A stretch of 64,000 nt of DNA from NCBI RefSeq assembly GCF_032062105.1, contig NW_026922193.1, positions 124,001-188,000 of the forward strand. Reading direction: 5' to 3'. A program made the position numbers and the translations under genes. The notes under the pieces are model-generated. The model saw nothing but the letters and a program-made list of their open reading frames with translations. It was not told the origin of the DNA and made no database searches. The stretch's first letter is position 1. Every line of letters begins with the position of its first letter. Positions 2,656 through 7,934 of this stretch are shown here, one piece after another. This DNA comes from Saccostrea cucullata. Its lineage: Eukaryota.

Positions 2656-2791
2656 AGTAGTGGAGTGCGCTCATATAGACCACGGTTTGAATTTCGCGCC
2701 AATGACGTCATCAAACTTTCGACCAATCAGAAGGCATCATTTGAATATTTGGTCACGTGACCTATCAAAGGAAAGGTCTGGACGAGAAGAG
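2656..2791 (+). repeat. Left terminal inverted repeat of the mini-Polinton (136 bp)
   Basis: Reverse complement of 7799-7934 apart from TGACGTCA vs TGACATCA. Confidence 0.93.
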
Positions 2792-3385
2792 CTCAGCCCG
2801 GAGGGTGTGCCGAGGTCATCAAGTGCAAATTCAAAAGGTTACCAAAAGGGTATACTAGTATTGTGACCTATCAAATGGAAGATCTCGACGAGGAGAGGTC
2901 GTCCCGGGGGTGGTCTGGGGTCATCAAGTGCAAATTCAAAAGGTTACTAAAAGTGTATCATGCGACATATCAAATGAAAGGTCTTGAGGAGGAGGGGTTA
3001 GCCCGGGGGTGGTCAAGGGTTATTAAGTGCAAATTCAAAAATTACACAAAGGGTATCGTGTGACATATCAAATAGAAGGTCTCAACGCGTAGAGTTCAGC
3101 CCGGGGGTGGTCAGGGGTCATCAAGTGTAAAATAAAAAAGTTACCCAAAGGGCATCGTGTGACATATCAAATGGAAGGTTTCGACGAGTACAGTTCAGCC
3201 CGGGGGTGTTCTGGGGTCATCGAGTGCAAAATCAAAAGGTAACTCAAAGGGTTTATTGTGACCTATCAAATGGAAGGTCTTGACGAGTAATGTTCAGTCC
3301 AGGGGTCTATCGAGCTCATCAAGTGCAAATGAAAAAAAAAATATCAAATGGAAGGTCTCAAAGAGTAAAGATCAGTCGGGGGTTG
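2757..3385 (+). repeat. Left subterminal tandem array, ~99-bp unit, ~6.5 copies
   Basis: Unit GTGACMTATCAAATGGAAGGTCTCGACGAG...CCCGGGGGTGGTC...GGGTCATCAAGTGCAAA; starts near 2757, 2863, 2962, 3060, 3159, 3258, plus a partial copy. Confidence 0.88.
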
Positions 3386-3500
3386 ATCAAAACAACACAT
3401 TGTTTTTGTTCATATTTTATTGCAAGACATGAAGAGCAATATTTTCGACATAAGTCTGAATACATATAATTTCAAGGAAAGCAATGATAATTGCATTAAA

Positions 3501-4598
3501 TTATGCAGCCATATCATCAGCATTTATCCAAGAATTAAACTTCTTTGGCCAATGCAGCCATTTCACAAAATATTGCTTGTTTGGTCCTCTTCCACGGGTC
3601 TTGAGGATCTTTTCAATCTTAAACGTATCCTCGTCTCTAACATCCACTTTTTGGAGTTCCGGTTGATAGAATGTCCCAGTAATGGCTTCGTCATTGTAGT
3701 CCTTGAGTTTGTACACTGGAATGCCGTTCCTCAGGAAACGTCGAAACACGATGAAAATTTCACCAGACCACTTTTGATCGTATTCCCTGTCGAAAATGGA
3801 TGATATTTTCGAAATGCGGACTTTATCACCCACTTTGTACTTGTAGGGCCGCTTTGATTGTTTGCGTGGGATCTCCTCTCGAGACAGGAATGTTGATACG
3901 CGCACTTCTTCTTCGTTGTTTGGTCTAACCAGTGCAGGTTCAGTGTCAATGGTGCGGTGGTACGTCTTGTTGTAACTCCGAGCGAATTCCTGAAGACGAT
4001 CAATGTATCGTTGGGATTGTTTGAAAGTCATGTAACGATACATCTTAGTTTTGATCGTCTTGATGGCTCTCTCTGCATAGTTGGCTTTCACTTCGGTGTT
4101 TTGAGAATAAAAATGTTCGATGTTGTGATCCTTTAATACATCATTGAAGGCTTTTGATCGGAATTCTTGTCCTTTGTCCGTGCGAAGCTTCTTAGGTTGC
4201 CTCCCCTCACGCAATACGTCTTCAAAGGCCCGGGCTGTCGTTGGCCCTTTCTTATCCTTTAAAGGTCGCATCCACAGGAACTTGGAGAAGATATCGATGA
4301 CCAAGAGTACGAACTGCACACCCTCATTTTCTGTGCTGAATCTTGTCATGTCCATGAGATCAGCGTCCCATTGATCATCAAGGCCAGCGACCACGACTTG
4401 ATTGCGACGATAATGTCGTCTCACGGGTCGCTGAAGACTGTAGGGTTCCTGTCTCTGTAACCATTTGCGTACCTTGTACTTGCTGATATCATATTTTCCC
4501 TCTTTTTGAACGTATCTGAATAATTTATCCACTCCGGTAAAACTACCAGCTGTGGATGGATCGTAATACACTTGCTTGAGATAATCCTCCCAAGACAT
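3501..4598 (-). CDS. Polinton-type retroviral-like DDE integrase with C-terminal chromodomain-like region (365 aa)
   Basis: Motifs QWDADLMDM, LLVIDIFSKF, LRTDKGQEF, AERAIKTIK, YNKTYHRTI, YKVGDKVRI, GTFYQPELQ and IEKILK...YFVKWLHWPKKFNSWI. First ATG at 4598 (the track start at 4670 is GTG). Confidence 0.93.
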   Translation of the reverse strand: MSWEDYLKQVYYDPSTAGSFTGVDKLFRYVQKEGKYDISKYKVRKWLQRQEPYSLQRPVRRHYRRNQVVVAGLDDQWDADLMDMTRFSTENEGVQFVLLVIDIFSKFLWMRPLKDKKGPTTARAFEDVLREGRQPKKLRTDKGQEFRSKAFNDVLKDHNIEHFYSQNTEVKANYAERAIKTIKTKMYRYMTFKQSQRYIDRLQEFARSYNKTYHRTIDTEPALVRPNNEEEVRVSTFLSREEIPRKQSKRPYKYKVGDKVRISKISSIFDREYDQKWSGEIFIVFRRFLRNGIPVYKLKDYNDEAITGTFYQPELQKVDVRDEDTFKIEKILKTRGRGPNKQYFVKWLHWPKKFNSWINADDMAA

Positions 4599-4800
4599 GT
4601 TTCTTCTGGCATGGACAACGTTAAAATGAAGCTTCAATGTACCCCAATCCCTTATATAATACCTAATCACGTGACTTATAATGACATAAATAACAATGCT
4701 GTTTTTTCACTGTTTATTCAAGTAAATGCAATAATATACAATCGATAGTCCATTTTTCAAACAATAAATGGACATAGTCTCAAAATGTTATTTAGACTTC

Positions 4801-6531: not shown

Positions 6532-6597
6532 GTTCACTCTTCCGCAGACACTCTTAAAATGTGACCAATTTATTCTTGAATCACCTTTTTATAGTTT

Positions 6598-7026
6598 TTA
6601 GGCAAAGGAACTGGTCATGGCTGCGGGTCGAAATATCAGAGTCAGGCTTATATCGCCATTCAAGAAGGTGGCATGCTCATAATCTTTATCTCTTATTTCC
6701 AGGCGTATCTTTTTCAACTCTTGGATTCGCATTGGAACTGGGTACGGTCTCGTGAAGATTTGATTCTTGTTGGACTCCAAAACAACACGCCTCAGCAATG
6801 GTCGGTATTGTTCACCCACTACAGACGTGTCGCATGCGTCACAGTAGATGAAAAGCTCCTTCTTTGTGGTCTTGACAGGGGTTGTGATATAAAATTCACT
6901 TAATTCTAGTGTCCACTGTTCCTTTAACACCAACATTTTTGGCAATGTGACGGTGAAATCATAAGGTTTGTTGCTTGGGAACAGGTGTTTGCCCACCGAA
7001 GATCGAAGGACTAGCGTCGTTGCCAT
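6598..7026 (-). CDS. Polinton minor capsid (penton/PX-like single jelly-roll) protein, compact 142-aa form
   Basis: N-terminal LRSS...FPSNKPYDFTVTLPKMLVLKEQWTLELSEF and C-terminal LFIYCD...SVVG...PLLRRV...YPVP...IRLEIRD...LTLIFR resemble the two conserved blocks of Polinton minor capsids. Confidence 0.75.
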   Translation of the reverse strand: MATTLVLRSSVGKHLFPSNKPYDFTVTLPKMLVLKEQWTLELSEFYITTPVKTTKKELFIYCDACDTSVVGEQYRPLLRRVVLESNKNQIFTRPYPVPMRIQELKKIRLEIRDKDYEHATFLNGDISLTLIFRPAAMTSSFA

Positions 7027-7134
7027 TCTGTTTGAAAATGAAGAGATTCATGATTGTTCAGAGCATTTATACTTTTAGGAAATTCATAAATACTGCACCA
7101 AATGGCCCGGAAAAACCCGGAATCGTCCATAAGA

Positions 7135-7834
7135 TAGGTCACACGCTACCTTAAGGTTATCTTTTGAATTTGCACCTGATGACCCCAGGAACACTTTCGA
7201 GTTAAACTCCACTTGTCGAGACTTGAGATATCACATTCAACACTTCAAGTTATAATTACTTTTTTATTTTGCACTGAATGACCCCGGAACACCTCCGAGC
7301 TGACCTCTCCTCGTCTAGACCTTCCAAGTAATATGTCACATGATACATTTTAAGTAACTTTTCGATTTTGCACTTAATGACCCCGGAACACCCCCGGGCT
7401 GAACTCTACTCGTCGTGACCTTCCATTTGATATGTCACTAGATACCCTTTGGTTAACCTTTTGATTTTGCACTCGATGACCCCAGACCACCCCCAGGCTG
7501 AACTTTACTCGTCGAGACCTTCCATTTGATATGTCACACGATACCCTTTGGGTAACTTTTTTATTTTACATTTGATGACCCCTGACCACCCCCGGGCTGA
7601 ACTCTACGCGTTGAAACCTTATATTTGATATGTCACACGATACCCTTTGGATAATTTTTGATTTTGCACTTAATGACCCCTGACCACCCCCGGGATGACC
7701 TCTCCTCGTCAAGTCCTTCCATTTGATATATCAGACGATACTTTTTGAGTAGCTTTGATTTTGCACTTAATGACCCCCCCCCCCCCCCCCGGGATGACCT
7801 CTTCTCGTCCAGACCTTTCCTTTGATAGGTCACG
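7135..7834 (-). repeat. Right subterminal tandem array, ~99-bp unit, ~7 copies, inverted relative to the left array
   Basis: Repeated TTTGCAC...TGACCCC...CTCGTC...CCTTCCATTTGATATGTCAC; copies decay towards the inside of the element. Confidence 0.85.
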
Positions 7835-7934
7835 TGACCAAATATTCAAATGATGCCTTCTGATTGGTCGAAAGTTTGATGATGTCATTGGCGCGAAATT
7901 CAAACCGTGGTCTATATGAGCGCACTCCACTACT
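7799..7934 (-). repeat. Right terminal inverted repeat of the mini-Polinton
   Basis: Matches 2656-2791 in reverse complement. Confidence 0.93.

What the first reader, a model, noticed from the sequence alone, without database searches (positions are those of the whole stretch)
2656..7934. Intact 5.3-kb three-gene mini-Polinton: candidate satellite of Polinton/Maverick viruses
Seen: AGTAGT termini, exact 6-bp TSD, TIRs with 1 mismatch in 136 bp, and three uninterrupted co-oriented ORFs (penton, packaging ATPase, integrase) filling almost all space between the terminal arrays, with no decayed fragments of other genes. Known: autonomous Polintons are ~15-20 kb and also encode pPolB, major capsid and a cysteine protease. 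Inference: this looks streamlined rather than randomly deleted. It could integrate with its own integrase, borrow polymerase and major capsid from a helper Polinton, and supply its own vertex protein and packaging motor to redirect encapsidation, much as phage satellites do.
Basis: partly seen in the sequence, partly recalled or inferred. Interest (0 to 1): 0.92.

Follow-up and report, generated by a model that had tools for sequence, protein, structure and literature searches.

The report
Three-gene mini-Polinton in an oyster-like genome
This is an intact 5.3-kb relative of the Polinton/Maverick virus-like transposons that keeps only a capsid-vertex protein, a DNA-packaging motor and an integrase; the same gene module recurs across bivalves, and the element may hitch-hike on full-size Polintons, though that dependence is not shown.

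Summary
The element spans 2656-7934, with AGTAGT/ACTACT tips, an exact ATTAAG target duplication, and termini matching at 135 of 136 bases, continued by inverted arrays of 99-bp units. It has three unbroken, co-oriented minus-strand genes, each with its own TATA-like box and AATAAA.

All three gene calls are supported:
- **Integrase:** rve plus chromodomain, with the D-D-35-E residues in place.
- **ATPase:** its fold matches the B204 packaging NTPase. It sits in a conserved composite protein with two C2H2 zinc fingers, a helical domain and an acidic tail.
- **142-aa protein:** a confident single jelly roll, closest to an adintovirus protein, the PBCV-1 penton and the mavirus penton.

No polymerase, major capsid or protease gene fits: only 662 non-coding bases lie between the arrays.

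The proteins belong to large bivalve families. Gene-model fusions and shared contig lengths show penton->ATPase->integrase linkage in several bivalve orders, so this is a conserved module rather than a one-off deletion.

Helper dependence is inference.

Verdict: a real new variant of a known kind; the satellite reading is plausible but untested.

The parts
2650..2655 (.). Left copy of the 6-bp target-site duplication (ATTAAG)
   Evidence: Identical hexamer abuts both tips.
2656..7934 (-). Whole element, 5279 bp; genes read on the minus strand
   Evidence: Bounded by AGTAGT/ACTACT tips and the duplication. G+C is higher than in most of the window.
2656..2791 (.). Left near-perfect terminal inverted repeat (136 bp); holds palindromes TGACGTCA (2703-2710) and GGTCACGTGACC (2751-2762)
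   Evidence: 135/136 identical to the reverse complement of 7799-7934; sequence read.
2757..3337 (.). Left subterminal array of 99-bp units (about 6, plus one weak seventh unit)
   Evidence: TRF period 99, 5.7 copies, 80% matches; unit phasing and identities.
3416..3421 (-). AATAAA downstream of the integrase gene
   Evidence: Pattern scan of the spacer; sequence.
3501..4598 (-). Integrase gene, 365 aa from the first ATG (4598), stop at 3501-3503. Catalytic core about 4071-4361, chromodomain about 3510-3623. Unbroken.
   Evidence: Pfam rve 6.7e-11 and Chromo 2.5e-7. D80, D141 and E176 are invariant among 30 relatives, with D-35-E spacing. 930 homologues, the best 85-87% full-length and 94-95% to a Saccostrea cucullata protein. 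No HHCC zinc finger at the N-terminus.
4652..4658 (-). TATA-like box upstream of the integrase ATG
   Evidence: sequence.
4713..4718 (-). AATAAA downstream of the ATPase gene
   Evidence: sequence.
4801..6531 (-). Composite zinc-finger/packaging-ATPase gene, 576 aa from the first ATG (6531). Domains: N-terminal C2H2 finger about 6451-6519; Pro-rich linker; ATPase about 5617-6249; variable linker; second C2H2 finger about 5317-5385; helical domain about 4897-5226; acidic tail 4804-4896. Unbroken.
   Evidence: Pfam zf-C2H2_4 4.4e-6 and Pox_A32 2.5e-4, the latter below cut-off. Many relatives carry precomputed Pox_A32 or Adeno_IVa2 hits. The architecture and Walker residues are conserved in 30 sequences. 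AF2 gives pLDDT above 90 across the ATPase. The best PDB fold matches are the B204 genome-packaging NTPases of STIV and STIV2 (E 8e-7, TM about 0.6 on the target). Both fingers match C2H2 structures by profile.
5431..5658 (-). In-frame tandem duplication of 114 nt (two 38-aa copies, 84-86% alike) inside the variable linker of the ATPase protein
   Evidence: The relatives vary freely in length in this linker.
6569..6574 (-). AATAAA downstream of the penton-like gene
   Evidence: sequence.
6587..6593 (-). TATA-like box upstream of the ATPase ATG
   Evidence: sequence.
6598..7026 (-). Penton-like single jelly-roll protein gene, 142 aa. Unbroken.
   Evidence: No Pfam or PDB sequence match. 804 cluster representatives at E<=1e-3, nearly all 130-150 aa. 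AF2 pLDDT 94.4, all-beta. Foldseek: adintovirus 161-aa protein at E 1.6e-10 and TM 0.82; PBCV-1 capsid chain 6ncl_a6 at E 3.4e-4 and mavirus penton at E 1.6e-3. Chain length 167 equals the ordered part of PBCV-1 penton P1.
7065..7071 (-). TATA-like box upstream of the penton-like gene
   Evidence: sequence.
7258..7833 (.). Right subterminal array of 99-bp units (6), inverted relative to the left array
   Evidence: TRF period 99, 5.8 copies, 82% matches.
7799..7934 (.). Right near-perfect terminal inverted repeat (136 bp), with the same two palindromes at 7880-7887 and 7828-7839
7935..7940 (.). Right copy of the 6-bp target-site duplication (ATTAAG)

Best explanation
**What it is.** An intact integrated copy of a compact Polinton/Maverick-derived element. 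It carries the canonical Maverick ends and 6-bp duplication but only three genes:
- a penton-like single jelly-roll protein;
- an A32/B204-type genome-packaging ATPase embedded in a conserved protein with two C2H2 zinc fingers;
- a DDE integrase with a chromodomain.

**Shown:** the anatomy, the folds, the catalytic residues, the separate TATA/poly(A) signals, and that the same module, in the same order and orientation, occurs in several bivalve orders.

**Inferred (how it works):**
- It has no protein-primed polymerase, major capsid protein or maturation protease, so it cannot copy its (AGT)2-ended DNA or build a shell by itself.
- It is therefore most likely propagated in trans by full-length Polintons of the same host. 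These would supply replication and the double jelly-roll shell.
- The element would contribute its own vertex protein and a packaging motor. The motor's zinc fingers may recognise the element's 99-bp arrays.
- Its own integrase would insert the product with a 6-bp stagger, and the chromodomain may steer it to chromatin.

This makes it work like a satellite or hitch-hiker. The anatomy is near certain; the helper dependence is not shown.
For: - **Ends and duplication:**, matching the commonest Maverick end motif with a perfect 6-bp TSD (PMC8097293).
- **Integrase:** rve plus chromo domains and an invariant D/D/E.
- **ATPase:** Pox_A32/IVa2-type Pfam hits in the family; the best fold match is the B204 packaging NTPase.
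- **Penton-like fold:** pLDDT 94.4; top matches are an adintovirus protein, the PBCV-1 penton-length chain and the mavirus penton.
- **Nothing else is encoded:** other ORFs have no Pfam hit, there is no Rfam hit, and only 662 non-coding bases lie between the arrays.
- **Each gene has its own TATA-like box and AATAAA**.
- **Lineage conservation:**
  - the composite ATPase architecture is kept in 29 relatives at 39-65% identity;
  - ATPase->integrase gene-model fusions occur in Mya arenaria, Mytilus coruscus and Crassostrea virginica, and one model joins integrase, penton and ATPase pieces;
  - seven ATPase/integrase hit pairs share source and exact contig length, with identities falling together from 77/75 to 57/51%;
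  - further shared Logan contig lengths appear.
- **Large 90%-identity clusters of close relatives** (161, 283 and 115 members) indicate many copies.
- **A related ATPase sits next to an adenain-type protease** in a Mytilus gene model, so fuller elements with this ATPase type exist as possible helpers.
Against: - No helper was identified, and the window holds no polymerase, capsid or protease gene.
- I could not establish that relatives are also three-gene elements. The module might sit inside larger elements elsewhere; some contigs carrying it reach 10-18 kb.
- No other copy of this element lies in the window, and its exact proteins are absent from the protein collection. Its own copy number is therefore unknown.
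- The extra zinc fingers, helical domain and acidic tail are not typical of packaging ATPases and could mean a different job.
- A jelly-roll fold alone does not prove a vertex role. Weaker fold matches include nucleoplasmin-like pentamers.
- Integrase-only DNA transposons exist (Ginger; PMC2836005), so a helper is not logically required for movement.
Confidence: 0.5

Rival explanations
1. A self-sufficient integrase-driven DNA transposon that descends from Polintons. The integrase acts as the transposase on the long inverted repeats. The zinc-finger ATPase serves as a DNA-binding accessory factor on the 99-bp arrays, as ATPase partners do for bacterial rve-family transposases. The small jelly-roll protein has a non-capsid role. 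No helper virus is needed.
For: - Integrase-only cut-and-paste elements with Gypsy/Polinton-like integrases are known (Ginger1/2; PMC2836005).
- The ATPase protein has gained two C2H2 fingers, a helical domain and an acidic tail, conserved across the family.
- Both ends carry arrays of repeated units, as binding-site arrays would.
- The families are very large, with 930 integrase and 405 ATPase hits.
- No fusion to a polymerase or capsid domain is seen among the listed gene models.
Against: - The ends are the (AGT)2/(ACT)2 motif typical of protein-primed Mavericks, not the TGT ends of Ginger.
- The best fold match of the ATPase is specifically a viral genome-packaging NTPase.
- The best matches of the small protein are virion vertex proteins and an adintovirus protein.
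- How a retrovirus-type integrase would excise the element is unknown even for Ginger (PMC2836005).
Confidence: 0.25
2. A dead-end defective copy: a Polinton that lost polymerase, capsid and protease genes by deletion or rearrangement and has no adapted life style. Its intact ORFs simply reflect youth.
For: - Most Maverick loci in vertebrates are degraded or incomplete (96%; PMC8097293).
- Only one copy is seen here.
- A close relative in Saccostrea cucullata has one internal deletion in its integrase model, so decay does occur in this family.
Against: - The same gene order recurs in different bivalve orders at 40-65% protein identity.
- Spacers are 66-231 bp with a promoter-like box and poly(A) signal for each gene, and there is no room for remnants.
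- In vertebrate Mavericks the ATPase lies beside the polymerase and the minor capsid gene beside the integrase (figure legend in PMC8097293). This order would therefore need more than one deletion, though bivalve full-length orders were not examined.
Confidence: 0.17
3. An assembly artefact (collapsed or chimeric assembly of a longer element), or host genes that merely resemble mobile-element genes.
For: - Long repeats with tandem arrays are hard to assemble.
- The window contains one N run elsewhere (43317-43484).
Against: - No N and no discontinuity lie inside 2656-7934.
- The two ends, the exact target duplication and the unbroken, tightly spaced genes form a coherent unit.
- Host genes would not be framed by Maverick ends and a TSD.
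Confidence: 0.04

Closest known systems
Polintons/Mavericks (polintoviruses, adintoviruses)
   Same: - 5'-(AGT)2//(ACT)2-3' tips, 6-bp target duplication and long terminal inverted repeats.
- Retrovirus-type DDE integrase without the HHCC finger.
- A32/B204-type packaging ATPase.
- Small single jelly-roll penton-like protein whose best structural match is an adintovirus protein.
   Different: - It lacks the protein-primed family B polymerase that defines the group (PMC5499653 abstract), as well as the double jelly-roll major capsid protein and the adenain-like protease.
- It is 5.3 kb instead of about 15-20 kb.
- The ATPase is fused to two C2H2 fingers, a helical domain and an acidic tail.
Non-autonomous derivatives of DNA transposons (internally deleted copies, MITE-like elements)
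   Same: It keeps the cis-acting ends of an autonomous family and lacks functions needed for its own propagation.
   Different: - It retains three intact, separately promoted genes in a module conserved across bivalve orders, rather than a random remnant.
- It keeps the integrase, which ordinary non-autonomous elements usually lose.
Phage satellites (P4, PICIs, capsid-forming PICIs); likeness in function only, from general knowledge
   Same: A small integrating element with its own integrase and some of its own morphogenesis or packaging genes, but without a full virion and replication set. Such elements exploit a helper's particles.
   Different: - It is a eukaryotic element with no sequence relationship to these.
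- Helper dependence and particle hijacking are not shown here.
- No capsid-size-redirecting protein was identified.
Virophages and polinton-like viruses
   Same: Same morphogenetic gene kinds (penton, A32-type ATPase). Some integrate with an rve integrase. They depend on another virus.
   Different: - Those encode their own double jelly-roll major capsid protein and usually a protease and a replication protein.
- They are 14-40 kb (PMC12220804 abstract).
- None of that is present here.
Ginger2/TDD integrase-encoding cut-and-paste transposons
   Same: Integrase-like DDE enzyme, inverted repeats and 6-bp AT-rich target duplications (PMC2836005).
   Different: - Ginger ends follow TGTNR, the target is RTATAY, and the enzyme has an H2C2 finger.
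- Here the ends are AGTAGT, the target is ATTAAG, there is no such finger, and two virion-type genes are present.
Transpovirons
   Same: Small (about 7 kb) linear elements with inverted repeats that ride in another virus's particles. They encode a zinc-finger protein (PMC3671162).
   Different: - Transpovirons lost the structural module and keep replication-type genes (PMC11161782).
- This element is the reverse: structural and packaging genes plus an integrase, with no replication gene.

Membership tests
Polinton/Maverick | [quoted passage not shown] | tested here: not met
   Only three ORFs have homologues. The other ORFs of 60 aa or more that were scanned have no Pfam hit. Only 662 non-coding bases lie between the arrays.
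Polinton/Maverick | Retrovirus-like (rve, DDE) integrase | tested here: met
   Pfam rve 6.7e-11. D80, D141 and E176 are invariant in 30 relatives. A C-terminal chromodomain is present.
Polinton/Maverick | 6-bp target-site duplication | tested here: met
   ATTAAG on both sides.
Polinton/Maverick | Long terminal inverted repeats with (AGT)2/(ACT)2 or (AG)3/(CT)3 end motifs | tested here: met
   AGTAGT...ACTACT tips; 135/136 at the ends, then about 760 bp at 83%. The motif is as described in PMC8097293.
Polinton/Maverick | Double jelly-roll major capsid protein | tested here: not met
   No ORF or space for it.
Polinton/Maverick | Single jelly-roll penton (minor capsid) protein | tested here: met
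   By fold only: pLDDT 94.4; matches to an adintovirus protein, the PBCV-1 penton-length chain and the mavirus penton. There is no sequence-level match to a named penton.
Polinton/Maverick | FtsK/HerA-superfamily A32-like packaging ATPase | tested here: met
   The window protein's own Pox_A32 hit is below cut-off (2.5e-4). Relatives carry precomputed PF04665/PF02456 hits. The best fold matches are B204 packaging NTPases. Walker residues are invariant.
Polinton/Maverick | Adenain-like cysteine protease | tested here: not met
   Absent from the element. It is present next to a related ATPase in a Mytilus gene model.
Ginger2/TDD | TGTNR termini, RTATAY target and H2C2 finger in the transposase | tested here: not met
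   AGTAGT ends, ATTAAG target and no HHCC motif in the integrase N-terminus. Criteria from PMC2836005.
Virophage / polinton-like virus | Own double jelly-roll major capsid protein plus penton and ATPase | tested here: not met
   No major capsid gene.
Satellite of a helper virus (functional class) | Propagation depends on, and uses particles of, a helper element | not testable with these tools
   Only the absence of replication and shell genes is shown. No helper was identified.
Satellite of a helper virus (functional class) | Shares cis-acting ends with the helper | not tested
   This needs the DNA of full-length elements from the same genome.

The most novel reading that the evidence does not exclude
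The penton-ATPase-integrase elements of bivalves would be the first satellites of animal Polinton viruses. On this reading they form an old, self-maintaining lineage that has shed polymerase, shell and protease. It keeps a vertex protein and a packaging motor that has acquired zinc fingers to recognise its own 99-bp arrays, and so claims helper-built capsids for its 5.3-kb genome.
Probability: 0.3. Interest if true: 0.85.

Novelty: new variant of a known kind. Interest (0 to 1): 0.62.

Why it matters
- **Parasitism among animal Polintons.** Polintons are thought to be real viruses of animals, yet particles have not been seen and their ecology is unknown. A conserved lineage that keeps only vertex, motor and integrase genes would show that Polintons have parasites of their own. 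That would parallel phage satellites and virophages.
- **Indirect evidence for virions.** Selection on a penton and a packaging ATPase without a shell gene only makes sense if shells are made by something else. This would be indirect genomic evidence that Polinton virions are actually produced in bivalves.
- **Annotation.** The zinc-finger-fused packaging ATPase is a protein architecture that genome annotations currently label only as 'C2H2-type domain-containing protein'. This may contribute to the very high counts of Polinton-like regions reported in bivalve genomes (10.1101/2025.04.19.649669).

Tried and rejected
**Searches that found nothing**
- Sequence searches for the 142-aa protein: no credible Pfam or PDB match, singly or as an 87-sequence profile. 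The only hits were non-significant (E 0.07-2.2). Only the predicted fold was informative.
- PDB sequence searches with the ATPase protein or its profile returned only zinc fingers.
- Exact look-up of the three window proteins, with both start choices: not in the collection.
- Names for penton relatives: none carried a name.
- Antisense and terminal ORFs: no Pfam hit. Rfam: no hit.
- blastn of the element against the window: no second copy or fragment.
- Literature (9 searches): no description of a three-gene penton-ATPase-integrase Polinton derivative or of a zinc-finger-fused packaging ATPase. The library lacks most subscription journals and Repbase, and Kapitonov & Jurka 2006 was not held.

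**Considered and rejected**
- Ginger2 membership: ends, target and finger do not fit.
- Dating the insertion from the inverted repeats: they are not made identical at insertion, and the arrays differ by one unit.
- Inferring element size in relatives from contig lengths: too indirect. I report it only as a hint.

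
Full report
**1. Observation**

The element runs from 2656 to 7934 (5279 bp).
- It starts AGTAGT and ends ACTACT, and is flanked on both sides by ATTAAG.
- Read inward, the two ends agree at 135 of the first 136 bases. Similarity then continues at about 83% over about 760 bp.
- That continuation is made of 99-bp units in tandem, at 2757-3337 and 7258-7833.
- The left arm has seven recognisable units and the right arm six. The best matches between arms are offset by one unit, at 89%, 96% and 89%.
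- So only the outer 136 bp are kept near-identical. The similarity of the ends cannot be used as a clock.
- No part of the element recurs in the other 58 kb of the window.
- Its G+C is 0.41-0.46 against 0.29-0.37 for most of the window; a few other windows reach 0.39-0.42.
- Three minus-strand ORFs are unbroken: 0 stops and 0 frameshifts. From the first ATG they encode 142, 576 and 365 residues.

**2. The genes**

*Integrase (3501-4598)*
- It matches Pfam rve (6.7e-11) and Chromo (2.5e-7).
- In an alignment with 29 relatives, D80, D141 and E176 are invariant with the classical 35-residue D-E spacing.
- It has no HHCC finger, which fits Polinton-type rather than Ginger-type enzymes (PMC2836005).

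*Middle gene (4801-6531)*
- It is not a plain ATPase. It has an N-terminal C2H2 finger, a proline-rich linker, the ATPase, a variable linker, a second C2H2 finger, a helical domain and an acidic tail.
- In this copy the variable linker carries an in-frame 114-nt tandem duplication (5431-5658).
- This whole architecture is shared by 29 aligned relatives at 39-65% identity, with invariant Walker residues and finger ligands.
- The window protein's own Pox_A32 match is weak (2.5e-4, below cut-off). Many relatives carry Pox_A32 or Adeno_IVa2 hits.
- The AlphaFold model has pLDDT above 90 across the ATPase. Its best PDB matches are the B204 genome-packaging NTPases of STIV and STIV2, at E 8e-7 and TM about 0.6 on the target.

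*142-aa protein (6598-7026)*
- It has no credible sequence match in Pfam or the PDB.
- It belongs to a very large family: 804 cluster representatives at E<=1e-3, nearly all 130-150 aa. It is therefore full-length.
- Its model is confident (pLDDT 94.4, pTM 0.87) and all-beta.
- The best match among viral models is a 161-aa protein of Drosophila-associated adintovirus 2 (E 1.6e-10, TM 0.82).
- Among solved structures the best matches are chain a6 of the PBCV-1 capsid (E 3.4e-4) and the mavirus penton (E 1.6e-3).
- Chain a6 has 167 residues, exactly the ordered part (2-168) of the PBCV-1 penton P1. P1 is described as a bare eight-stranded jelly roll (PMC6344570).

**3. Organisation**

- Each gene has a TATA-like box 39-60 bp upstream of its ATG, at 7065-7071, 6587-6593 and 4652-4658.
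- Each has an AATAAA after its stop, at 6569-6574, 4713-4718 and 3416-3421.
- Coding sequence fills 83% of the space between the arrays. The four spacers sum to 662 bp.
- Other ORFs have no Pfam hit and there is no Rfam hit.
- So there is no polymerase, major capsid or protease gene, and no room for their remains.

**4. Relatives (proteins only)**

- The ATPase part finds 405 proteins and the integrase 930.
- Named hits are almost all bivalves: Pecten, Mizuhopecten, Argopecten, Pinctada, Mytilus, Mercenaria, Ruditapes, Mya, Solemya, Crassostrea and Saccostrea.
- The closest named relatives are from oysters. One is a Saccostrea cucullata protein 94-95% identical to the integrase, with one internal deletion. 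Another is a Crassostrea (Magallana) angulata member of a close ATPase cluster. The window is therefore probably from an oyster, which is an inference.
- Close relatives form large 90%-identity clusters of 161, 283 and 115 members, which suggests many copies.
- Linkage of the three genes is seen in two indirect ways.
  - *Gene-model fusions:* profiles of the three families, run over all proteins fetched, find six models that join ATPase to integrase in that order (Mya arenaria three times, Mytilus coruscus, Crassostrea virginica and one unnamed). One further model joins integrase, penton and ATPase pieces.
  - *Contig lengths:* seven ATPase/integrase hit pairs share source and exact contig length. 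Their identities to the window fall together, from 77/75 to 57/51%. More such coincidences appear among Logan contigs.
- One Mytilus model joins a related ATPase and its second finger to an adenovirus-type protease domain. Elements with this ATPase type and more genes therefore exist.

**5. Best explanation**

- The ends, the duplication and all three genes place the element in the Polinton/Maverick world. The 5'-(AGT)2//(ACT)2-3' motif with a perfect 6-bp duplication is the commonest end type of vertebrate Mavericks (PMC8097293).
- It nevertheless lacks the polymerase that defines the group, and the shell and protease genes.
- Conserved architecture, conserved gene order in distant bivalves and tight, individually signalled genes argue for a maintained compact lineage rather than a chance deletion.
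- A penton and a packaging motor are of use only with a shell, and (AGT)2 ends are those of protein-primed replicons. The most economical reading is therefore propagation in trans by full-length Polintons, with the element's own integrase doing the insertion.
- The zinc fingers on the motor and the arrays at both ends suggest self-recognition for packaging. This last step is pure inference.
- I put the anatomy at about 0.9 and the helper-dependent mechanism at about 0.5.

**6. Rivals**

- *A self-sufficient integrase-driven transposon with a repurposed ATPase and jelly-roll protein (0.25).* Ginger elements are a precedent, and the additions to the ATPase protein fit a DNA-binding accessory role. 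The Maverick ends and the specifically virion-type fold matches speak against it.
- *A dead-end defective copy (0.17).* It fits the general decay of Mavericks but not the conserved module.
- *An assembly artefact or host genes (0.04).* Nothing in the sequence suggests it.

**7. Novelty**

- Nine literature searches found no description of a three-gene penton-ATPase-integrase derivative or of a zinc-finger-fused packaging ATPase.
- A recent survey reports that bivalves have the highest load of Polinton-like regions of any eukaryotes, without describing this form (10.1101/2025.04.19.649669).
- The library lacks Repbase and most subscription journals, so prior description cannot be excluded.
- I class it as a new variant of a known kind.

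Noticed in passing
window 12094-13992 (+): Two adjacent ORFs of a LINE-like retrotransposon: an endonuclease/exonuclease/phosphatase domain (227 aa) and a reverse transcriptase (351 aa).
   Followed up: partly
window 28072-29340 (+): Intronless 422-aa ORF with a rhodopsin-family 7TM receptor domain (5.6e-18), probably a host GPCR gene.
   Followed up: partly
window 43317-43484: Run of 168 N (assembly gap or mask).
   Followed up: no
window 2703-2710 / 7880-7887 and 2751-2762 / 7828-7839: Two palindromes lie inside the near-perfect 136-bp termini: TGACGTCA (CRE-like) and GGTCACGTGACC (contains an E-box). They are possible protein-binding sites.
   Followed up: no
proteins P0139, P0141, P0144: Relatives of the 142-aa protein in which three copies of the jelly-roll domain follow each other in one 389-396-aa protein. 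They may be true triple-domain proteins or merged tandem genes.
   Followed up: no
protein P0150: A 442-aa protein whose first 66 residues are 58% identical to the penton-like protein. The rest is a Lamp2-like luminal domain. It is probably a host gene model that absorbed an element fragment.
   Followed up: partly
proteins P0074 and P0373: Two homologues are labelled as bacterial: a Sedimenticola MAG and the Solemya velum gill symbiont (a 49-member cluster). Given the bivalve-wide family, these are probably host DNA in symbiont bins.
   Followed up: no
window 5431-5658 (-): An in-frame 114-nt tandem duplication (84-86% alike) lies in the variable linker of the ATPase protein. Relatives vary freely in length there.
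   Followed up: partly
window 6290-6416: A GGC-rich 15/27-nt periodic stretch encodes the proline-rich linker. It creates long spurious antisense and alternative-frame ORFs (6122-6466 +, 6176-6517 -) with no Pfam hit.
   Followed up: yes
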